From Octopus sinensis (taxonomy: Eukaryota), in NCBI RefSeq assembly GCF_006345805.1, contig NC_043006.1:39928001-39992000 (forward strand): 64,000 nt of DNA, in the 5' to 3' direction. The notes under the pieces are model-generated. The model had not been told where the DNA came from, did no database searches, and worked only from the letters and a program-made list of their open reading frames with translations. This document shows positions 2,786 through 57,516 of this stretch, in pieces (the stretch's first letter is position 1; every line of letters starts with the position of its first letter). Made by a program: the position numbers and the translations under genes.

Positions 2786-3014
2786 TTTCTTTATTGCCCA
2801 CAAGGGGCTACACATAGAGGGGACAAACAAGGACAGACAAACGGATTAAGTCGATTACATAGACCCCAGTGCGTAACTGGTACGTAATTTATCGACTCCG
2901 AAAGAATGAAAGGCAAAGTCGACCTCGGCGGAATTTGAACTCAGAACGTAACGGCAGACAAAATACCGCTAAGCATTTCGCCCGGCGTGCTAACGTTTCT
3001 ACCAGCTCGCCGCC
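2786..3014 (-). mobile_element. tRNA-derived SINE, family A (full length, tail 1)
   Basis: Reverse complement reads ggcggcgagctgg..gttagcacgccgggcgaaatgcttagc..gagttcaaattccgccgaggtcgactttgcctttc..tgtgtagccccttgtgggcaataaag. More than 10 related copies occur in the window. Confidence 0.9.
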
Positions 3015-3016
3015 TT

Positions 3017-3170
3017 ATTCTTTCAGATTCTTTCAGTTTCTGTCTATCAAATCCATTCACAAGGCCTTGGTTGACCCAGGGCTAAAGCAGAGGACACCTA
3101 CCCAAGGTGCCACGCAGTGGAACTGAACCTGAGATCACGTGGTTTGAAGGCAAGCCTCTTACTACGCAGC
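3017..3170 (-). mobile_element. SINE family B, 5' half
   Basis: Reverse complement matches the gttcagtcccactgcgtggcaccttgggcaagtgtc..aaagccttgtgagtggatttggtagacggaaactgaaagaa motif repeated at 34.5, 45.3, 55.1, 56.8 and 62.8 kb. Confidence 0.8.
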
Positions 3171-6164: not shown

Positions 6165-6420
6165 CCGTCGGTTTGACCTGATCAACGGAACATCTGCTCG
6201 TGAATCGAACGTGCAAGTGGCTGAACACTCCGCAGACACGCGTACCTCTTAACGGAGTTCTTAGAGTGATTCAGCGTGATACAGAATGTGACAATGTTGG
6301 CCGTTTTGAATTACAGGTACAACTGGCTTTTGCCAGCTTAGTGGACTGGAGCAACGTGAAATAAAGTGTCTTCCTCCAAGACATATCGTGCCGCCTGGTA
6401 TCGAACTAACGACCTAACGA
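6165..6420 (-). mobile_element. SINE family E copy
   Basis: ctccgtcggtt..gatcaacggaaca..ctcgtgaa..aacgtgcaagtggctga..cagcgtgatacagaatgtgacaa is shared with copies at 33.9, 48.2, 52.1, 55.5, 59.7 and 61.6 kb. Confidence 0.75.
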
Positions 6421-18260: not shown

Positions 18261-18863
18261 AATTCTTTTCTACTCTAGGCACAAGAGACGAAATTTTGTG
18301 GGGAGGGAGCCAGTCGATTAGATCGACCCCAGTACGCAACTGGTACTTAATTTATCGACCCCGTTAGGATGAAAGGCAACGTCGACCTCGACGGAATTTG
18401 AACTCAGAACGTAACGGCAGATGAAATACGGCTACGCATTTCGCCCGGCGTGCTAACGTTTCTTAATTCTTTATTTCCCACAAATGGCTAAACATGCAGG
18501 GGACAAACAAGGATAGACAATGGGATTAAGTTGATTATATCGACCCTAGTACGTAACTGGTACTCAATTTATCGACTACGAAAGGATGAAAGGTAAAGTC
18601 GACCCCGGCGGAATTTGAACTCAGAACGTAACGGCACACGAAATACCTACTTCTTTACTACCCACAAGAGACTAAACACAGAGGGAACAAACAAATACAG
18701 ACAAAAGGATTAAGTCGATTACATCAACCCCAGGGCGTAACTGGTACTTAATTTATCGACCCCGAAAGGATGAAAGGCAAAGTCGACCTCGGCGGAATTT
18801 GAACTTAGAACGTAACGCTAAGCATTTCGCCAGTCGTGCTTACATTTCTACCAGTTCGCTGCC
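18261..18863 (-). mobile_element. SINE family A trimer (one full unit and two 5'-truncated units)
   Basis: Three successive gaatttgaact..tcgac..gaaaggatgaaagg cores, with tail-to-internal junctions at about 18647 and 18460. Confidence 0.85.
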
Positions 18864-23540: not shown

Positions 23541-23793
23541 TCGCGATGTACTTACTGGTACTTTAAACTCTTCGGTTACATATTTGTGTGAATAAAATCG
23601 TTTTTCTTTGGAATAGAAAAAATGTCTATCTTTATTTCTTCTTTCGCTGGTGTCTCAAATTTAGGTTAAATCAGTGTTTCTCAAAGGGGAGGCCTATGGG
23701 ATAGCCGGACATGTTGTTTTGAGAAAATTTGGTTTAAATGTTTGACAACTCAGCAACGTCCATTGGACGTGGGGTGCGTTTTTCTCGTATATA

Positions 23794-24110
23794 TCTTTAT
23801 ACATATAAAACTGAGAATGTGTGTCTGACTGTCTGTCTGTGTGTTTCCCTAAAACTTGAGAACTATACAACCAATTTTATTCAAATTTTACACATGCCTT
23901 ACTCCGGGGAGTGTCATCGGCAAAAAAGCCCACAGCAATATCATATCTTCTCCACTACGATTCCCTAAAACTTGAGAACTACACAACCAATTCCATTCAA
24001 ATTTTACACATGTCTTACTTAGGGTCCATGTAGTTTCATGGGCAAAAAAGTGTTCAATTTCTTGCCTAGAGCGAGCCCATAGCAATATCATATCTTCTCA
24101 ACTATTTCAG
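23794..24110 (+). mobile_element. Helitron-like 5' end (A|TC) with an internal direct duplication
   Basis: a|tctttatacatataaaactgagaatgtgtgtctg. The block ttccctaaaacttgagaacta..caaccaatt..attcaaattttacacatg occurs twice (about 23845 and 23960). Confidence 0.6.
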
Positions 24111-24432
24111 TATTACGTGTTAAAAGTGAAACAAAAACGTTTCTCTATTTTATGTCAGATACTTTCACTTTAACAATAAAAATAATAATAACAATTGAAT
24201 TATATGTAGTAACTAATAATTAAAATCAAACTAAAGTAACATAACAAAAGTAAAAATAGCAATTGGTATAAAATTGCATCAGTGATTTGAACTTCAATAA
24301 GTGGTTTCACATGAATGGGAATAAATTTAAAATAAAATTAGCGTGCAGAAATGGAATAGTCCAGATGGATAATAAAAAATTAAATTAAAGAAAAGACTAT
24401 TGTCTATAAAGTATACAATGTAGAGAAAAAAG

Positions 24433-26095
24433 GTCGCGTTTTTTTGCGCTCTGTAAAATTCGGTTAAAAAAGAACAAAAAGTGAATTGTGGTTGCGGAAT
24501 TGGAACGTCGGTTGGTGCGGTTTCGCGTCGCACTGGTTCTGTGCGTCGCACGTTTTCTGTTCGGGAGGCCGTTTTTCGGTCTGAGGCGACTATGAGCCGC
24601 CTCTACCAAACGGATGAGATGGAAGGGAGAAATTTCTCTGAAAATTCGTCGACATCTGAGGAGGAGTTGGCGGTGAAAAAAATGGAAAGCACCTACGCAG
24701 GTATAACGAAGAAGTCAACAGAAAAAGAGATAGACCTGGCTAAGTTGACGGACTTCCAGGAGTTCATGAAGGAGGAGGAGAACGGAGAGGTTGAGCTGTT
24801 GCCTCTAGCAGGGCGCGGAGACTGGTTCCATCATAGAACCATTAAATATAAAGTATTTATGAATGGAGGTAGAAAAATGGAAGTGATTAACATGGAAGCA
24901 ATTGAAGAGGCTTTCAAACAGACAGGAGAAGAAATTGTGTACATGACAAAAGGATTAGAATATGGAACCATAACGGTACAATTTAAAAGTGAGAAAGCAG
25001 CCAGGAATATAGCAGCCAAGGTGGTGAGTACAGAAAAGTTTTACTTGTTCCCCTCGTATTTGAATAGAAGGACCACCAGAATTAGGGTGGAAGGAATACC
25101 TCCACACCTAGAGGGCGAATTAATAACGGCTGCGGTTATCAAAGGAAATGAAGATAAAGTGGACATCCTCCACGCCATTATGAAATATGAAGGCGTGAGA
25201 GGTGCCACACTAGTAATAAACATACAGACGGAGGCGGAAGTTATAGAAAAGCTTACGGACAGTATAAAAACTGGAAATATTATTATGAGAGTGTGGGTGG
25301 AGGGTAGGGCGCCCAGGTGCTACAAGTGTGGCCTGAGGGGTCACATAAGAGCCTACTGCCCTCCCCCACCAAAGGAAAAAGAAAAGGAAATTGTCGCGGA
25401 AGCCCCAAAAGAGGAAGAAACCAAAGAGAACCAAAGGGAAAAAGAAACGACAGAAGAAGAGGAGATGCAAGCAGAGTGGGAAGAAGGAAGAAAAAAGAGA
25501 AAAGAAAGAAAAAGAAAAACTGTGCGAAGCCCCAACCCACCCCAACACCACCCGCACCCTCTGAATCCCACCCTTCCCCTGCAGACAGTGAACCCACCCT
25601 CTCCCCTCCAACAAGAAAACAAAAGAAAAATACAGACAGACAAGAGTTTGAAAACGAACCCAGGCCGAACATTTATATTGTGACTGAACAGAAAGAGGTT
25701 GCAAGGGTAATGGAGGAGTATGAATGGTATGAAATGGATGGGACCAGATATGCAGTGCTGGAAAAGAAGAATATAGATGAGTTTGTGTTGAGGTGTGAGA
25801 GGGAGAATTGGGAGGTGAAGGATACAAGAATGAGCGATGAATTCGTGGAATATATGGAGGACAGTTTCGGAGTAAGAATGGATATGGATGGTCTTCGTAT
25901 TGGGAATGAACATTCAGGTGACAGTGAAAACAAAAGGACAGGTAAGTGATGCTGGCGGAGGGGGCCGTTAGCATCGCTTTCATATTATCATTTTTTCATT
26001 TTCATTTGCTCATAAATTTAATCATATTGTTCTATGTCCCCCATGTTTTGTTATGTCCGCCATTCTTCGTAGCCCCTGGTGGGTAATAAAGAAAT
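24433..26095 (+). mobile_element. ORF1-only non-LTR retroposon, copy 1 (no ORF2; SINE-A-like 3' tail)
   Basis: One gag-like ORF, about 145 bp of 3' UTR, then the tail gtagcccctggtgggtaataaagaaat. No endonuclease or RT sequence lies between the ORF and the tail. The 5' boundary is approximate. Confidence 0.75.
24592..25949 (+). CDS. L1/Tx1-like ORF1 (gag-like RNA-binding protein, RRM-like plus CCHC), about 450 aa with one -1 frame disruption
   Basis: ATG at 24592 (MSRLYQ..). RRM-like YGTITVQFKSEKAA and TRIRVEGIPPHLEGELI, zinc knuckle CYKCGLRGHIRAYC, then an E/K-rich linker. The frame changes at about 25530-25560 into the 25317-25949 frame (..PNIYIVTEQ..YEWYEMDG..*). Confidence 0.8.
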
Positions 26096-26108
26096 AACAT
26101 GGAGGAAA

Positions 26109-28014
26109 TCTATCCACATGTGTTGTGAGTTATTTTGTATGTGAAAATTGAAAAAAGACTGTTAAAAATTGTCAAAAATTGAATCCGCGAGGCGTTTGCC
26201 GCTACGTGTTTGAACCTTTTATAGAAGGTGTGTCGACCCTCAAGTCATGGAGACTTACGCGGGGGTCGCCACAACAAAAAGTGACGAGTCACTTAGAATA
26301 AAAGAAGTGTTCTTTAGAAAAGAACAATTGAAGGAATACGAGAAGTTCGTCAAAAGGGAGGGTGACAGCGTGAAGCTGGTCCCGCCTGTGGAAACAATAG
26401 AAGAGAAAAATAACATCACGATAACGTATAGAACGCAAGATAGAAACACGAGAAAACTGGTGAGAGTGACGATTGAAGAAATAGAGAAATGTCTGGGGAC
26501 ATCATGAAAAAAGCGACTTTTGTAGACAGAGGAAAGAAATATGGTACGGTGGAGGTGAGATGCGCAACAAAGGAAGTGGCGGCCTCATTGGCTTCCACTG
26601 TCCTGAAAGCGGAAAATTTCACCATGTGGCCGACGTATAAAGAAGACGAGGGGTACGGGTAAGAGTCCCAAAGGTGCCCCCAAATATTAAAACAGAAATG
26701 CTGGTAACAGCCATTATTGGGGCAGCAAAAGAGGAAGTAGAAATAGGGTCAATTAAGGAGACGAACGTTGTAATTGGAAGGGATTCGGAGTAGAGTTGTG
26801 GCTAATGGCCCAATGGAAGACATCGAAAGATTTCCCTTCCAAATAGAAATAGAAAACGAGAAGACATTAGTGTAATAGTGGAAGGCAGAAAACCGAATTG
26901 CTACCTGGGCGGATCAAGAGGGCACATAAAAAAGGAATGTCCGCTGTATGAATTCACAGCGGAGCAAAAAGAGACACAAAGTGGAGAGAAGGAAAACGAA
27001 CACGAAGAAGGAAAAGCGAAAACAAGGAAAAGGAAATAACGGAGAAACAACAAGAGAAGGGAAGTAACAGCGCACTGAAGGAAAATGAAAACAAAGGGAA
27101 GAAGATAGTAGAAAAGGAGCAAAATTCACAGGGTGCAGAAGTAGAGGAGAAGGAGCCAAGGCAGAAGCAAGAGAAAGAAAAGGAAAGTACTTAAAGGAAA
27201 GAGAAAAAGCAGGAAAAGAACAAGAGAAGGAACAGAACCAAGAGAAAGGAAAAGATGGTATGCAAAAAGGAAAAGAAACAACAGGAAAGGAACTTAAGGC
27301 ACAGGGTAGAGAGACGGCAGACAAAGAGCCAAAAGACAAGAGAAGGAAAAAGAAAGAAGAGAAAGCAAAAAGAGAGAAAGAGAGAAACCGAGGGAGGAGA
27401 AAAAAGAGGAAGTAAGTCCTAAGAGAAAAACTAGAGAAAACGCAGGTACGAATAGAAAATTCAAATACTATGGAACGTTGATCCATCACAAGCACTGTGA
27501 GGAGATGGAAAATTTAATAAGCGAAACAAACGGATATACGTGGGTCAGGATGGGCACCGAATGGAAAGAAACAGGTGCACTCGTCCACGAGAACGACGCC
27601 GAGGCGTTCATCGAGGCAGCTGGCGAGAACGTGTTAAAACATATGAAATGCCGACTTCCAAGGTGGCCTCGAACGATGGAAATTTACTCAGATTTGGTAG
27701 ACATAATGGAGTATATATAAAAGAAAAGGTATTGTGAAAACTTAATTTGGAAATGATAAAAGAACTTTAAATTCGGAAAAAAAAAAAAAAAGAAATGTTG
27801 AACTTTGTAAAACTTTTTGAAATGTATGTTGAAAATGTATAAAATGTTTTATTTGAAAATATTGTTGACGAATAAAAATAATGACGAAATGTAACCGCTC
27901 GATTACGGGGATCGAGTGGGCATTGCACCACATTGTACAAACTTCATAATTCATTATTCATTTTCCCGATTGTATTGTCCCATCTATGTAGCCCCTAGTG
28001 GGTAATAATAAAAC
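26109..28014 (+). mobile_element. ORF1-only non-LTR retroposon, copy 2, flanked by a perfect 13-bp TSD
   Basis: aacatggaggaaa occurs at 26096-26108 and 28015-28027. The tail is tatgtagcccctagtgggtaataataaaac. The internal ORF1 is homologous to copy 1. Confidence 0.8.
26247..27722 (+). pseudogene. Frameshifted ORF1 of copy 2
   Basis: METYAGVATTKS (copy 1: MESTYAGITKKS), DRGKKYGTVEVRCATKEVAA, RVRVPKVPPNIKTEMLVTAII, VIVEGRKPNCYL[G]GSRGHIKKECP (second Cys lost), C-terminal YTWVRMGTEW..ALVHENDAEAFI. There are at least four frameshifts. Confidence 0.8.
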
Positions 28015-28330
28015 AACATGGAGGAAAGCACCTTCGAAAAGTGTCTTGGTGCAACTATGAAAGGTATCTAATCAGAGGCGGTAAATTCGCCACAATAGAA
28101 GCAAAGTTCGAGTCAATGGAGCGTGCAAGGGAATACTCGACTCGAACTTGCAAAGTGGAAATATTTTACTTTTACCTTTATATCTGGGACGTAGGACGTC
28201 CTGGAAAAAATTGAAAATGCCCCCCCCCCCTGAAGTAGAGGTAGGCTGGATTGTAGCCACACTTCTATACAAGAGGGAGGACAAGATACAATTGATCGAA
28301 ATTACAAGAGACGGGCTAACAATTCCAGTT
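28015..28330 (+). pseudogene. Internal fragment of a third ORF1 family member
   Basis: NMEESTFEKCLG..YLIRGGKFATIEAKFESMERAREYS..LQSGNILLLPLYLGRRTSWKKLKMPPPPEVEVGWIVATLL aligns by eye to copy 2 (IEKCLG..DRGKKYGTVEV..WPTYKRR..VPP..MLVTAII) and to copy 1 (FPSYLNRRTTR..IPP). Confidence 0.7.
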
Positions 28331-28464
28331 TGTTATATATTTTTAGTATTGTTATCACTAGCGATATCAAGATATAACTTTGTATTTTGTATTTTATGTG
28401 TAGATGTATATATATATAGATGTACATGTAATATGTACACATATATATACACATATATACATGC

Positions 28465-28506
28465 ACTAGCACTATGACCCGGCAACGACGGGTCTTTAAT
28501 GCTAGT
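28465..28506 (+). mobile_element. Helitron 3' terminus (hairpin plus CTAG)
   Basis: gacccg-gcaacga-cgggtc hairpin at 28476-28494, then ctag|t at 28502-28506. The segment is quasi-palindromic (actagca..tgctagt), so it could be a stand-alone mini element. Confidence 0.65.
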
Positions 28507-28507
28507 A

Positions 28508-28570
<63 letters not shown>

Positions 28571-29051
28571 GAGAGAGAGAAAGAAAGAGAGATTTTATTT
28601 TACAAATATGTGTGTGTGTTTGTGTGCCCCTGGGCGTTTGTTGTGTATTATTTAATGTACACTGTATTAAATACACCGTATTAAAATGAAAGCTACTAAT
28701 AGTTTCTTCCCACTCAGACATGTGGTTAGGTAGATTCTTATATTGTGCCTTGTGTCTCCATGCAATCTACAGGCTCTGGTCACATGTTTTTTTTCTATCT
28801 GAAAATCAGGACGCTGACACATGAGAAGTTCCAAAAAAATAAACGAGAAGGTTGATGCAAAAGATGAAATGAAAAAACAAAGAGTAACTAAAGAGGGGAA
28901 AAAGAAAAGAAAAGAAAGGAAAGAAGGAAAATTAGACTTACGTTGCCTTTGACCGCAGAAATCATATTTAAACTACTTATTGTAGAATAATTCAACGAAG
29001 AGGATTCCGAGTTTGCGAGATAAGTGTTCAATCCGGGGAGGTAGATGTCTT

Positions 29052-35495: not shown

Positions 35496-35965
35496 TTATT
35501 TCTTTATTGCCCATGAGGGGCTTAACATAAAGGGGACAAACAAGGACAGAAAAACGGATTAAGTCGATTACATCGACCTCCAGTGAGTAACTGGTATTTA
35601 ATTTATCGACCCCGAAAGGATGAAAGGTAAAGTCGACCTCGGCGGAATTTGAACTCACAACGTAACGGCAGACGAAATGCCACTAAGCATTTCGCCCGGC
35701 GTGCTAGTGTTTCTGCCAGCGTGCTAACGTTTGTTATTTCCTTATTGCCCACAAGGGGCTACACAAAGAGGGGACAAATAAGGACAGACAAACGGATTAA
35801 GTTGATTACATCGACCCCAGTACGTAACTAGTACTTATTTAATCGACCCAGGAAAGGGTGAAAGGCAAAGTCGGCATCGGCGGAATTTGAACTAAGAACG
35901 TAGCGGCAGACGAAATACTGCTAATAATTTCACCCGGCGTGCTAACGTTTCAGCCAGCTCGTCGC
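35496..35965 (-). mobile_element. SINE family A dimer
   Basis: Two cores with tail 1. The junction (minus sense) aataaggaaataac|aaacgttagcacgc lies at about 35733. Confidence 0.85.
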
Positions 35966-51948: not shown

Positions 51949-52389
51949 TGTATCTTTGAGAAAGACACTTTATTCCACGTTGCTTCAGTCTACTCAGCAG
52001 GCAGAAAGGAACAGTACCAGTAATTCAAATGGCCAACCTTGTAACATTCTGTGCCAGGCAGAATATCACTGAGAACTACGTTAAGGGTAGGTGTGCCTGT
52101 GAAGCGCTCAGCCACTTGCACATTAATTTGACAAGCAGGCTCTTCCGTTGATCGGATCAAATGGAACCCTCGTCGTCGTCGTCGTAACCGTCGGAGTGCT
52201 GGTAGCACCCACTCCAGACAAATCATTAAAGTGGGCCCTATAGTATTTATTTATTGACAGAAAACCTCAGGTCACATAGATCAGAATTCGGATCCTAGTT
52301 CCGTGAGGCCTCGGGCAGCAACCCAGTTTGCCCGTGTGCCAAGATAGCACAAAGTCCGTGATCCTATTAACACAAACATCTTTGTACAA

Positions 52390-52808
52390 GGCGGCGAGCT
52401 TGCAGAATAGTTAGCACGCCGGGCGAAAGGCTTGGCGGTATTTCGTCTGCCGCTACGTTCTGAGTTCAAATTCCGCCGAGGTCGACTTTGCCTTTCATCC
52501 TTTCGGGGTGGATTAAATAAGTACCAGTTACGCACTGGGGTCGATGTAATCGACTTAATCCGTTTGTCTGTCCTTGTTTGTCCTATCTGTGTTTAGCCCC
52601 TTGTGGGCAGTAAAGAAATAGGTATTTCGTCTGCCGCTACGTTCTGAGTTCAAATTCTGCCGAGGTCGACTTTGCCTTTCATCCTTTCGGGATCGATTAA
52701 ATAAGTACCAGTTACGCACTGCGGTCGATATAATCGACTTAATCCGTTTGTCTGTCCTTGTTTGTCCCCTATATGTTTAACCCCTTGTGGGCAATAAAGA
52801 AATAATAA
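52390..52808 (+). mobile_element. SINE family A dimer (tail 1 plus tail 1)
   Basis: A full unit, then a restart at gtaaagaaata|ggtatttcgtctgccg (52620/52621). Confidence 0.9.
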
Positions 52809-55497: not shown

Positions 55498-57113
55498 CAA
55501 AGGGCCAGCTTTGTTACATTCTGTGTCACGCTGAATCTCCCTGGGAAGTACGTTAAGGGTACACATATGCTCAACCACTTGCACATTAATTTCACGTGCA
55601 GGCTGTTTCGTTGATTGGATCGACTGGAAGCCTCGTGGTGGTAAGCGACGGAGAGCCAGTATATACATACATTTATACACACACACACAAACAAACAAAC
55701 AAGATACGTGTTCATAAATACATGTAAGGGGGTGTATACAGAATGGCTAACGCTAATTCTCCTCGTCTACGAAATGCTGAAATGCTCAATGTATATTCGT
55801 AAAGAGCCTTAAAGACCACAGTTAATGGTTGTAGTTACTTCAGTAACATGGCTTCGTATCATTATCCAAAAGTTTAGACACAGAAAACTTCAACGGAGTT
55901 TTGCAATGGCTGAAACATCAAAAGAAAACCCTGAATTTGATAGCAAATGCTTGAAAATACAATGGCGTTTTCAGTTGATATAAAAGTCCTTTAAAGATCT
56001 CTGTGCGCAAAATTCTGAATACTAGAATGATACCGTGATTGGAAAATAACTACTGGCATAAAACATGTGATTGTATGTATGTATGCATGTATGTATGTAT
56101 TTGCATGTACTTGAGTCAAGCCAACGAGATAGTTTCTTTATGCTCTCCCTATTTACTAAATATACCATCGAAATTCCATTCATATCGTACTCTGTCATCT
56201 TGCAAGATCAAGAACAAGTTTGAAAATTTAGATCTAATCGAAATGACGTCAGCAGGTATATTTTTCACAATGTGCAATAACTGTCAATTATTGTTATATT
56301 CAAATTCTACAGCCGTTGATTGCCTTTGATAAACTACATGACAATTATTAAGCATTCCGGCGAATTCTCTTAAACCTCGCTGTTGAGAAGGACTTTATGC
56401 GTTATAATAAAAAGGGAAACATGATTTTATGTCTTTTTTTCTTAAGTTTTGTTTTGAATCCATTCAATAGAAATGGTTAAATGACAAGAATAGAAGAACA
56501 ACGGTTTAAAGACCTAGCTGTATTGCGTTCGATCAATTTACATTCCGCGTTCAAATCCTGCATGATTTAACTATTTTATTTGTTTCAGTGTATTAGACTG
56601 CGGCCGTACTGGAGCAGCACCTTGGGGAATTTTAGTCGAATGAATCGACTATTTTAAACCAGTTACCTTGTCTATCGTCTGTTTTGTCGAACTGCTAAGT
56701 TATGGAAACGTAAACACACCAGCACCGGTTGCCAAGCAGTAGTAGTGAATACAGGACCAAAGACTCACACACACGAACACATTCAAACATATATACGATG
56801 GTCTTCTTTCAGTCTCCGTCGACCAAATCCACTCACAAGGCTTTCGTTGGGCCAAAGCTATAGTTGAAGATACTTGCTCAATGTGCCACGCAGTGAGACT
56901 GAACCCGGAACCATGTGGTCGGGAAGTAAATTTCTTGCCACATAGCCGCGCCTGCGCCTATGTAGCTATCTAATTTCTTCTGAAGATCGATAGTATAAGC
57001 ACCAGTCAAATACTTTGGATCAATTTATTGAGTAAATCTTTATCCATATGCTTAACCATGTGCCAATGTATGAAACCATTGTGATCTTTGAACTCATTAT
57101 CGGTGCATCTAAA

Positions 57114-57516
57114 GGCGGCGAGCTGGCAGAATGGTTAGCACACCGGGCTAAATGCTTAGCGGTATTTCGTCTGCCGCTACGTTCTGAGTTCAAATTCCGC
57201 CGAGGTCGACTTTGCCTCTCATCCTTTCGGGGTCGATTAATTAAGTACCAGTTACGCACTGGGGTCGATTTAATCGACTTAACCCCCTTGTCTGTCCTTG
57301 TTTGTCCTCTCTGTGTTTAGCCCGTTGTGGGTAGTAAAGAAATAGGTATTTCGTCTGCCGTTACGTTCTGAGTTCAAATTCGGCCGAGGTCGACTTTGCC
57401 TTTCATCCTTTCGTGGGGGTTGATAAATGAAGTACCAGTTGCGTACTGGAGTCGATCTAATCGACTATCCCCCTATCCCCAATTTCAGGCCTTGTGCCTA
57501 TAGTAGAAAGGATTAT
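57114..57516 (+). mobile_element. SINE family A dimer (tail 1 plus tail 2)
   Basis: A full unit, a restart at gtaaagaaata|ggtatttcgtctgccg (57344/57345), and a second unit ending cccaatttcaggccttgtgcctatagtagaaaggatta. Confidence 0.9.

What the first reader, a model, noticed from the sequence alone, without database searches (positions are those of the whole stretch)
24433..28014. ORF1-only retroposon family sharing its 3' tail with the local SINE (a candidate HAL1-like system in a mollusc)
Seen: two tandem elements (about 1.66 and 1.9 kb) each have a short 5' UTR and a single gag-like ORF1, go straight into a short 3' UTR, and end in gtagcccct(g/a)gtgggtaata. No endonuclease or RT sequence is present in either. 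The two proteins are clearly diverged from each other, so these are not tandem duplicates. Copy 2 has a perfect 13-bp TSD, so it was inserted as a complete unit without ORF2. Established: TSDs with a 3' tail mark target-primed reverse transcription, SINEs parasitise LINEs through shared 3' tails, and ORF1-only HAL1 elements are known from mammalian L1. Inference: this is a non-autonomous family that keeps its own RNA-binding ORF1 and borrows RT in trans via the same tail as SINE A. I am not aware of such a family being described in cephalopods, but I cannot search.
Basis: partly seen in the sequence, partly recalled or inferred. Interest (0 to 1): 0.88.

Follow-up and report, generated by a model that had tools for sequence, protein, structure and literature searches.

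The report
ORF1-only LINE derivatives in octopus arrays
The two elements are real members of octopus retroposon families that keep only the first (RNA-binding, gag-like) gene of a LINE and share their ends with a complete LINE and a SINE. The supposed 13-bp insertion scar is really the conserved first bases of the element, and these units sit head-to-tail in arrays on many chromosomes.

Summary
Window 24433-26095 (c1) and 26096-28014 (c2) are two diverged units (about 30% amino-acid identity) built as 5'UTR, one CCHC-knuckle ORF1, 3'UTR and tail, with no endonuclease or RT. The tail box is shared with at least 8 SINE tails in the window.

Three corrections apply.
- Neither ORF is intact here. 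c1 has 1 frameshift; c2 has 8 single-base deletions and has lost a zinc-knuckle Cys. Intact copies of both exist in Octopus vulgaris.
- A third, 5'-deleted unit (c3) follows at 28015.
- The "perfect 13-bp TSD" AACATGGAGGAAA is not a TSD. It is the conserved 5' terminus of the family, and starts three separate full-length LINE copies elsewhere.

The main inference holds. In O. vulgaris I found the autonomous partner: ORF1 of the same type, APE, RT and zf-RVT, with the same 5' start and the same last ~55 nt. I also found more than 35 ORF2-less units on 6 chromosomes. ORF1 is under purifying selection (dN/dS 0.1-0.23).

All copies seen lie in mixed head-to-tail arrays without TSDs, so how they integrate is unresolved. 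This is a HAL1/HeT-A-like system in a cephalopod, not described in the papers I could search. Repbase and Dfam could not be checked.

The parts
24415..26095 (+). c1, an ORF1-only unit. The 5'UTR runs to 24591. ORF1 spans 24592-25949 and is split by a 1-bp deletion in the A-run at about 25500. The 3'UTR is 25950-26095.
   Evidence: It is 98% identical to O. vulgaris copies in L001 and L003. The L003 copy has one intact 453-codon ORF from the ATG.
25329..25373 (+). CCHC zinc knuckle of c1 (CYKCGLRGHIRAYC).
   Evidence: Pfam zf-CCHC is weak in the window copy and passes the cut-off in the intact c2 copy. A PDB profile search hits retroviral nucleocapsid knuckles only.
26069..26095 (+). c1 3' tail box, GTAGCCCCTGGTGGGTAATAAAGAAAT.
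26096..28014 (+). c2, an ORF1-only unit of a second, diverged family. The 5' terminus AACATGGAGGAAATCTATCC is at 26096. The ORF1 remnant spans 26247-27722, with 8 frameshifting deletions and a knuckle Cys-to-Gly change. The 3'UTR is 27723-28014.
   Evidence: It is 97% identical over its full length to L002:10413-12329, which has an intact 493-aa ORF.
26096..26108 (+). First copy of AACATGGAGGAAA. This is the 5' terminus of c2, not a TSD.
   Evidence: The same bases start the LINE in L003, in L002 minus strand and in L005.
27988..28014 (+). c2 3' tail box, GTAGCCCCTAGTGGGTAATAATAAAAC.
   Evidence: The last ~55 nt are nearly identical to the tail of the autonomous LINE.
28015..28300 (+). c3, a third unit: the same 13-nt 5' terminus joined to the interior of a diverged ORF1 (MEESTFEKCLG...RGGKFATIEAKF...). 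It has no tail of its own.
   Evidence: It closes the arrays in L001, L003 and L004 as well.
23790..24414 (+). Left flank that travels with c1. It is shared with two O. vulgaris loci on different chromosomes; homology stops upstream of about 23790.
28301..28760 (+). Right flank that travels with c3. It is shared with L001, L003 and L004.
2791..3020 (-). SINE copy with a B-box-like GAGTTCAAATTCCGC and the same tail box, GCCCCTTGTGGGCAATAAAGAAA.
35504..35965 (-). Two SINE units head-to-tail, with a 14-nt patch of internal SINE sequence at the junction.
52388..52797 (+). SINE dimer with the junction AGAAATA|GGTATTTCGTCTGCCG. The same junction occurs at 18471-18817 (-) and 57112-57466 (+).

Best explanation
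c1 and c2 belong to two old, diverged families of ORF1-only LINE derivatives in Octopus. Each unit is a LINE that has lost ORF2. It keeps the LINE's 5' terminus (ACATG...), a 5'UTR, a gag-like ORF1 (N-terminal region, one CCHC knuckle, K/E-rich linker, C-terminal domain), a short 3'UTR, and the LINE's 3' tail box (GTCCCA...GCCCCTNGTGGGTAATAA...AAC).

Shown:
- A related autonomous LINE exists with ORF1 of the same type, then APE, RT and zf-RVT, and with the same two termini.
- A tRNA-like SINE carries the same tail box.
- ORF2-less units occur in many copies on many chromosomes, some with intact ORFs.
- ORF1 has evolved under purifying selection within the ORF2-less lineages.

Inferred:
- The units are transcribed and make their own ORF1p.
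- They are reverse-transcribed in trans by the LINE's ORF2p, which recognises the shared tail.
- New copies are laid down directly against resident family members. This would happen either by RT jumping from the 5' end of one RNA to the 3' end of the next, or by priming on a resident end. Both could be helped by the ACAT shared by the RNA's two ends.
- Arrays are then reshaped by unequal exchange.

The window holds one such small array, c1|c2|c3. Both window copies are dead, or mis-assembled.
For: Structure and lack of ORF2:
-.

Same unit elsewhere, with the same ends:
- c2 at L002:10413-12329 is 97% identical and has an intact 493-aa ORF.
- c1 in L003 has an intact ORF.
- c1b arrays of 9 or more units occur in L001 and L004.
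- c2b arrays occur in L005 and L006.

Partner LINE:
- L003:13681-18896 is one copy.
- L002 minus strand, about 6195-1010, has an intact 438-aa ORF1 and an ORF2 with one frameshift.
- Pfam finds Exo_endo_phos, RVT_1 and zf-RVT.
- The best PDB match is human L1 ORF2p, E = 2e-37.

ORF1 homology:
- LINE versus c1, c1b and c2 gives 32-34% identity, E = 1e-38 to 1e-43.

Shared tail:
-.

Purifying selection:
- c2 versus c2b gives dN/dS 0.185 overall and 0.105 in the N-terminal domain.
- c1 versus c1b gives 0.23.
- c2 and c2b share the ORF2-less 3'UTR layout, as do c1 and c1b.

Arrays fed from a common pool:
- Units of different arrays are as alike as units within one array.
- Tail subtypes are interspersed within arrays.
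- 5' ends vary.
Against: - No solitary ORF1-only copy with its own TSD was found. All 6 loci fetched, and the window, are arrays. Part of that growth is plainly DNA-level, such as the 5.2-kb three-unit block duplicated at 99.8-100% in L001.
- The loci came from annotated gene models, so sampling is small and possibly biased.
- The LINE copies found have an ORF1 only about 33% identical to c1 and c2. They are therefore not the direct parents, and trans-mobilisation by them is inferred from the shared ends only.
- dN/dS was measured between single genomic copies at near-saturated dS (1.1-1.4). For the C-terminal domain of c1 versus c1b it is about 1.
- The window copies themselves are disrupted.
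- Expression was not tested.
Confidence: 0.78

Rival explanations
1. One reading: c2 was inserted on its own by ordinary target-primed reverse transcription into the c1/c3 junction, leaving a perfect 13-bp target-site duplication.
For: - The 13-mer occurs exactly twice, flanking c2.
- A related locus in O. vulgaris (L001) has c1 followed directly by c3, with a single copy of the 13-mer. This looks like an empty site.
Against: - The same 12-13 bases are the first bases of the full-length LINE in L003 after a c2-type tail.
- They also start the LINE in L005 after a c2b tail.
- In L002 minus strand they follow non-tail DNA and are not repeated after that LINE's tail.
- c2b and c1b units also begin (A/C)ACATG.
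- The L002 c2 copy has no TSD.
- L001 is not an ortholog. Homology to the window stops about 640 bp upstream.
Confidence: 0.07
2. These are not a mobile family. One or a few internally deleted LINE copies were amplified and spread only by DNA-level processes (tandem duplication, unequal exchange, segmental duplication).
For: - L001 contains a duplicated three-unit block (units 1=4, 2~5, 3~6).
- The flank-c1...c3-flank block recurs at 3-4 loci with shared flanks.
- No TSDs are seen.
Against: - Arrays lie on 6 chromosomes in different contexts; L002, L005 and L006 lack those flanks.
- Unit boundaries coincide with the LINE's RNA termini.
- 5' ends vary by truncation and by extra bases.
- Different families (c1b, c2, c2b, LINE, LINE fragments) are mixed in one array.
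- Units are not array-specific clades.
- ORF1 is under purifying selection.
Confidence: 0.1
3. The units are a host gene family: tandemly arrayed, domesticated gag-like genes that merely descend from LINE ORF1.
For: - Purifying selection acts on ORF1.
- Intact ORFs exist in several arrays.
- RefSeq and GenBank carry them as 'uncharacterized protein' models.
Against: - Most units are disrupted.
- Units retain the LINE 5' terminus, the UTRs and the tail box, which a host gene would not need.
- Arrays include full LINEs and LINE fragments.
- Copy number and position differ between related loci.
Confidence: 0.05

Closest known systems
HAL1 (half-L1) of mammals
   Same: It is a non-autonomous LINE derivative that encodes only ORF1p, shares ends with its autonomous LINE, and depends on ORF2p supplied in trans. 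HAL1 arose several times (PMC5753468, citing Bao & Jurka 2010). Here too there are at least two deep ORF1-only lineages, c1/c1b and c2/c2b.
   Different: - The host and the LINE differ. This is a cephalopod LINE with a CCHC-knuckle ORF1 and a specific, non-poly(A) tail box that it shares with a SINE.
- HAL1 copies are dispersed with poly(A) tails and TSDs. All copies seen here lie in head-to-tail arrays without TSDs.
HeT-A / TAHRE / TART of Drosophila telomeres
   Same: An ORF1(gag)-only element (HeT-A) coexists with an autonomous relative and builds mixed head-to-tail arrays without TSDs, including 5'-truncated members (own knowledge; PMC5932611 and PMC13534243 for the arrays).
   Different: - The arrays here are chromosome-internal, for example at 32 Mb of 119 Mb and 57 Mb of 80 Mb.
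- They are not at chromosome ends.
- They involve a SINE partner.
- No telomere role is suggested.
Stringent-type LINE/SINE pairs with a common 3' tail (Ohshima & Okada model)
   Same: The SINE, the ORF1-only units and the LINE share a specific tail of about 40-55 nt ending in an A-rich stretch. The tail may form a stem (GTCCCA...TGGGTA).
   Different: A protein-coding parasite uses the same tail here. The stem-loop is only suggested: folding z-scores are not significant and covariation was not formally tested.
TE tandems formed by consecutive insertion and expanded by unequal exchange (McGurk & Barbash 2018, PMC5932611)
   Same: There are tail-to-head and tail-to-internal junctions, dimers that grow into arrays, and a block duplication inside the L001 array.
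   Different: - Tandem arrangement is the rule here rather than the exception.
- Junctions are exact at the RNA termini.
- Short 12-14-nt internal patches sit at some junctions.

Membership tests
ORF1-only non-autonomous LINE derivative (HAL1-like, in the broad sense) | Encodes a protein homologous to the ORF1 of an autonomous LINE | tested here: met
   blastp of c1, c1b and c2 against the LINE ORF1 gives 32-34% identity, E = 1e-38 to 1e-43. The alignment shows shared YGTV..V.F, PP, VEGR.P.C..CG..GH motifs.
ORF1-only non-autonomous LINE derivative (HAL1-like, in the broad sense) | No endonuclease or reverse transcriptase in the unit | tested here: met
   tblastn with the partner's APE and RT finds nothing in the window. 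Units are 1.7-1.9 kb, with ORF1's stop followed by 150-290 nt of 3'UTR.
ORF1-only non-autonomous LINE derivative (HAL1-like, in the broad sense) | Shares the 3' end recognised by the partner's RT with an autonomous LINE | tested here: met
   The last ~55 nt of c2 and of the LINE are nearly identical. c1 and c1b share the core box.
ORF1-only non-autonomous LINE derivative (HAL1-like, in the broad sense) | Many copies produced as ORF2-less units, not one-off deletions | tested here: met
   More than 35 units were found at 6 O. vulgaris loci on 6 chromosomes, plus the window. None continues into ORF2.
ORF1-only non-autonomous LINE derivative (HAL1-like, in the broad sense) | Individual insertions flanked by their own target-site duplications | tested here: not met
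   The claimed 13-bp TSD is the 5' terminus. No unit examined has a TSD, and all lie in arrays.
ORF1-only non-autonomous LINE derivative (HAL1-like, in the broad sense) | ORF1 kept by selection after loss of ORF2 | tested here: met
   dN/dS is 0.185 for c2 versus c2b and 0.23 for c1 versus c1b. Each pair shares the ORF2-less layout. Caveats: dS is near saturation, and the c1/c1b C-terminal domain gives about 1.
HAL1 proper (derivative of mammalian L1) | Derived from mammalian L1, with L1-type ORF1p (coiled coil, RRM, CTD) and a poly(A) tail | tested here: not met
   The host is an octopus. ORF1 has a CCHC knuckle and the tail is a specific box without poly(A). This is an analogue of HAL1, not a member.
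L1/Tx1-group LINE (the partner element) | APE endonuclease, RT, and a C-terminal zinc-binding motif in ORF2 | tested here: met
   Pfam finds Exo_endo_phos (3e-15), RVT_1 (2.5e-25) and zf-RVT (7.6e-9). The best solved relative is human L1 ORF2p, E = 2e-37, against R2 at 2e-24.
L1/Tx1-group LINE (the partner element) | Phylogenetic placement of the RT inside the L1/Tx1 group | not tested
   No reference RT set (Repbase) was available. The clade assignment is a lead only.
HeT-A/TART-type telomeric arrays | Arrays located at chromosome ends | tested here: not met
   The loci lie at 32.3/118.9 Mb, 13.9/41.2 Mb, 57.3/80.0 Mb, 37.7/84.7 Mb, 100.1/128.6 Mb and 64.2/225.7 Mb of their chromosomes.
Already catalogued repeat family (Repbase/Dfam) | A consensus for these units exists in a repeat library | not testable with these tools
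   No repeat library was on hand. The papers searched describe only RTE and Dong LINEs in octopus (PMC9115989).

The most novel reading that the evidence does not exclude
The LINE, its ORF1-only parasites and its SINE form a self-concatenating system. Their RNAs begin with ACAUG and end with ...AACAU. When the RT reaches the 5' end of one template, the cDNA end would then pair with the 3' end of the next RNA, much as retroviral R repeats guide strand transfer. The RT would copy that RNA in turn, writing mixed head-to-tail arrays in single integration events at internal chromosomal sites. The short 12-14-nt internal patches at some junctions would be abortive jumps.
Probability: 0.22. Interest if true: 0.75.

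Novelty: new member of a known kind. Interest (0 to 1): 0.5.

Why it matters
ORF1-only LINE parasites are well known only from mammalian L1 (HAL1) and from Drosophila telomeres (HeT-A). An independent case in a cephalopod has two old lineages that keep ORF1 under selection while borrowing ORF2. It bears on why a parasite of a LINE would pay to keep its own RNA-binding protein, whether for cis-packaging or for access to the partner's RNP.

The case also gives the abundant octopus SINE a candidate LINE partner. Its strict head-to-tail array habit at internal sites offers a natural system for studying either template jumping or end-directed integration, and for watching TE arrays turn into macrosatellites.

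Practically, these units are currently annotated as 'uncharacterized protein' genes and chimeric gene models in octopus assemblies.

Tried and rejected
- TSD reading. It was accepted at first, after the 'empty site' in L001. It was rejected once the same 13-mer was found at the 5' end of the LINE in L003, L002(-) and L005.
- Orthology of L001 to the window. Rejected: homology ends about 640 bp upstream, and a second locus (L003) has the same flanks.
- My early idea that c3's 13-mer is ORF1 coding sequence matching c1's AACATGGAAGC. Dropped as a chance 8-mer, because the codons do not align with c2 or the LINE.
- Pfam and PDB searches for an RRM or L1-type ORF1 fold found only the CCHC knuckle.
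- Tail hairpin. Single-sequence folds were not better than shuffles. The alignment register differs between families, so I did not run a covariation count.
- P0003 locus: no DNA was returned because the gene range is too long.
- L003 never appeared in the script sandbox, so parts of it were brought in through alignments or pasted in.
- Bao & Jurka 2010 could not be read.
- Rfam found nothing in the window, and ARAGORN found no tRNA.
- Structure prediction and the exhaustive HMMER search were not used. Only window sequences were admissible, and the window ORFs are broken.
Full report
**What is in the window.**
- Positions 24433-26095 (c1) and 26096-28014 (c2) are two adjacent units on the + strand.
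- Each has a short 5'UTR, one long ORF1-type frame, a 150-290-nt 3'UTR and the tail GTAGCCCCT(G/A)GTGGGTAATA. A 20-mer search allowing 3 mismatches finds this tail four times in 64 kb, against none in 100 shuffles.
- The frames are not intact. c1 reads MSRLYQ...CYKCGLRGHIRAYC... up to a K/E-rich stretch and then continues in another frame to ...RTGK*.
- c2 is broken many times.
- Directly after c2 lies a third, shorter unit, c3 (28015 to about 28300). It translates to MEESTFEKCLG...RGGKFATIEAKF..., an ORF1 interior.
- tblastn with the APE and RT of the partner LINE (found later) hits nothing in the window.
- Pfam sees only a weak CCHC knuckle.

**Relatives.**
- The c1 protein finds five Octopus vulgaris gene models, and the c2 protein finds nine. 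All are 'hypothetical' or 'uncharacterized'.
- Fetching their loci from assembly GCA_951406725.2 gave six loci on six chromosomes.
- L001 holds nine units of a c1-like subfamily (c1b, about 72% nucleotide identity to c1 over the whole unit, 80% in its alignable parts). A 98% copy of c1 follows, and then c3 directly.
- L004 holds at least nine c1b units ending in c3.
- L005 holds at least four units of a c2-like subfamily (c2b), followed by a LINE.
- L006 holds at least five c2b units.
- L002 holds c1b pieces, a full c2 (97% to the window's c2, same ends) and LINE fragments on one strand. On the other strand it holds c1b, a LINE fragment, a full LINE and c1b.
- L003 reads: flank, c1, c2b, a c2b/c2 hybrid, a full LINE, c3, flank.
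- None of the more than 35 ORF1-only units continues into APE or RT.

**Intact copies.**
- The L002 c2 copy has one uninterrupted 493-aa ORF with a proper knuckle, CYLCGSRGHIKKEC (Pfam zf-CCHC at 24.6 bits, above the cut-off).
- Against it, the window's c2 shows eight single-base deletions inside the ORF, mostly in short runs of a single base, and a TGC-to-GGC change at the second Cys.
- The L003 c1 copy is a single ORF. The window's c1 differs by one missing A in an A-run at about 25500.
- Intact ORFs also occur in c1b (L001 unit 7, L004 unit 0) and c2b (L006 unit 2).
- Whether the window's lesions are decay or homopolymer assembly errors cannot be decided from the sequence.

**The autonomous partner.**
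- L003:13681-18896 and L002 minus strand (about 6195-1010) are full-length LINEs.
- The L002 copy has an intact 438-aa ORF1 and an ORF2 with a single frameshift.
- ORF2 has Exo_endo_phos, RVT_1 and zf-RVT. Its best solved relative is human L1 ORF2p, E = 2e-37.
- This fits an L1/Tx1-like LINE, but I could not place the RT phylogenetically.
- The LINE's ORF1 is of the same type as c1 and c2: 32-34% identity, E = 1e-38 to 1e-43 (alignment).
- Its last ~55 nt (GATTGTATTGTCCCATCTATGTTCGCCCCTTGTGGGTAATAATAAAACAAC) are nearly the same as c2's. c1 and c1b share the core.
- c2's 3'UTR also keeps AAATGTAAyC, which in the LINE follows the ORF2 stop. It may also retain a trace of the ORF1-stop/ORF2-start junction.
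- The LINE copies found are too diverged in ORF1 to be the direct parents of c1 or c2.

**The SINE.**
- A tRNA-like SINE (B-box-like GAGTTCAAATTCCGC) ends in ...TTGTCCCCTCTATGTGTAGCCCCTTGTGGGCAATAAAGAAA.
- A looser 18-mer finds eight SINE tails plus the two ORF1-unit tails in the window, against 0.27 expected.

**The '13-bp TSD'.**
- AACATGGAGGAAA does flank c2, and L001 has c1 followed by c3 with one copy.
- However, the same bases are the first bases of the LINE in three separate contexts:
  - after a c2-type tail in L003 (AACATGGAGGAAATCAATTTTTGCC);
  - after a c2b tail in L005;
  - in L002 minus strand, after non-tail DNA (…GAGACCCTTGAAC|ACATGGAGGAAATCAATTTTTTGCG). There the LINE's own tail is followed by GTGTTTGAG…, not by the 13-mer.
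- c2b begins AACATGTCTGAAATC.
- Full c1b 5' ends begin CACATGTTTTTTTCGG.
- The L002 c2 copy starts 9 nt further in (GAAATCTACCC) and has no TSD.
- The 13-mer is therefore the family's 5' terminus, shared by c2, c3 and the LINE. Units abut tail-to-head with nothing between them.
- By the same comparison, c1 probably starts at 24415 (ACAATGTAGAGAAAAAAGGTCGCGTTTTTTTGCG, compared with the LINE's ACATGGAGGAAATCAATTTTTTGCG).
- L001 and L003 are not orthologs of the window in any simple sense. The three loci share about 640 bp of left flank and the c3/right flank, but nothing further upstream.

**Selection.**
- c2 and c2b share the ORF2-less 3'UTR layout, as do c1 and c1b. Each pair therefore diverged after ORF2 was lost.
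- Pairwise Nei-Gojobori estimates for c2 versus c2b give dN/dS 0.185 over 458 codons. By region: N-terminal domain 0.105, linker 0.27, C-terminal domain 0.31.
- For c1 versus c1b the estimate is 0.23.
- dS is high (1.1-1.4), and single genomic copies include post-insertion decay, which pushes the ratio up rather than down.
- c1 versus c1b is a mosaic. The N-terminal half is saturated at silent sites, while the 3' half is only about 16% diverged with dN/dS near 1. This points to recombination between lineages.

**How the arrays grow.**
- Some growth is DNA-level. In L001, units 1/4, 2/5 and 3/6 are 99.8-100% identical, which is a duplicated 5.2-kb block.
- The arrays are not simply local amplifications, for five reasons:
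  - Units of L001 and L004 are as alike (97.5-99.2%) as neighbours within an array (96.3-98.7%).
  - One L006 c2b unit is closer to L005 units than to its own neighbours.
  - Two tail subtypes are interspersed.
  - 5' ends differ between junctions.
  - Different families and LINE fragments are mixed.
- SINEs behave alike. Most SINE tails in the window are followed at once by another SINE unit. One dimer junction recurs at three loci, and one junction holds a 14-nt patch of internal SINE sequence.
- Both L002 arrays hold a 12-nt patch of ORF2 sequence after a tail.
- Where tails are followed by non-family DNA, they end ...AACAT, and 5' ends begin ACATG. The RNA therefore seems to carry the same 4-5 nt at both ends.
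- This would favour either end-to-end template jumping or priming on a resident element's end.
- Consecutive insertion followed by unequal exchange is the documented route for non-LTR tandems in Drosophila (PMC5932611). I cannot separate these routes with the data in hand.

**Comparison with known systems and novelty.**
- The closest analogues are HAL1 (ORF1-only L1 derivatives that arose several times in mammals; PMC5753468) and HeT-A with TAHRE/TART.
- This is not HAL1 proper, because the host, the ORF1 type and the tail all differ.
- The arrays are chromosome-internal, so it is not a telomeric system.
- The only octopus LINE study I could read reports RTE and Dong elements (PMC9115989). Four literature searches found no description of this family. 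Repbase and Dfam could not be consulted.
- I rate it a new member of a known kind. It is well supported as an ORF1-only LINE parasite, with the TSD argument corrected and the integration mode left open.

Noticed in passing
window 18471-18817 (-), 52388-52797 (+), 57112-57466 (+); L002 30037-30449 (-): The SINE often occurs as a fixed dimer. A full unit is followed by a unit starting at internal position ~54, always with the junction AGAAATA|GGTATTTCGTCTGCCG. This looks like a dimeric SINE subfamily that itself amplified.
   Followed up: partly
window 35700-35720 (-); L002 12330-12341 (+) and about 6212-6223 (-): Short 12-14-nt patches of internal family sequence sit between a tail and the next unit's 5' end. 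The SINE patch is AAACGTTAGCACGC; the ORF2 patch is TAAGGGAGACCC, found after two different tails. They lack tails of their own, so they cannot be separate insertions.
   Followed up: partly
window 23790-24414 and 28301-28760; L001, L003, L004: The DNA on either side of the c1...c3 block (about 640 bp on the left, about 460 bp on the right, bounded by microsatellites) recurs with the block on at least three O. vulgaris chromosomes. The whole block is itself a repeated unit of unknown nature. The window copy has an extra 116-bp tandem duplication at 23845-24076.
   Followed up: partly
L002 14300-19810 (+): This is a second, different full-length LINE. It has a 463-aa ORF1 of the same CCHC type (about 30-35% identity), then APE and RT, but a different 3' end that runs into (AT)n.
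   Followed up: no
L003 5108-7366 (+); P0004 C-terminus: An unrelated RTE-like endonuclease/RT element lies next to the arrays. The O. vulgaris gene models P0001-P0005 are chimeras spliced across several array units or into neighbouring TEs, and in P0003 into a CFAP65-like host gene.
   Followed up: no
window 26247-27722 versus L002 10554-12035: All 8 indel differences inside the c2 ORF are single-base deletions in the window copy, mostly in short runs of a single base. This pattern is typical of long-read assembly error as much as of decay.
   Followed up: partly
window 27884-27905; L002 and L003 c2-type 3'UTRs; c1 25949-25977: The 3'UTRs carry a perfect small hairpin with a G-rich loop: CTCGATT(A/T)CGGGGATCGAG in c2 and GATGCTGGCGGAGGGGGCCGTTAGCATC in c1. 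The LINE has GGGGCTCGTGGGGTCCGAGC just after the ORF2 stop. This may be a second shared RNA element.
   Followed up: no
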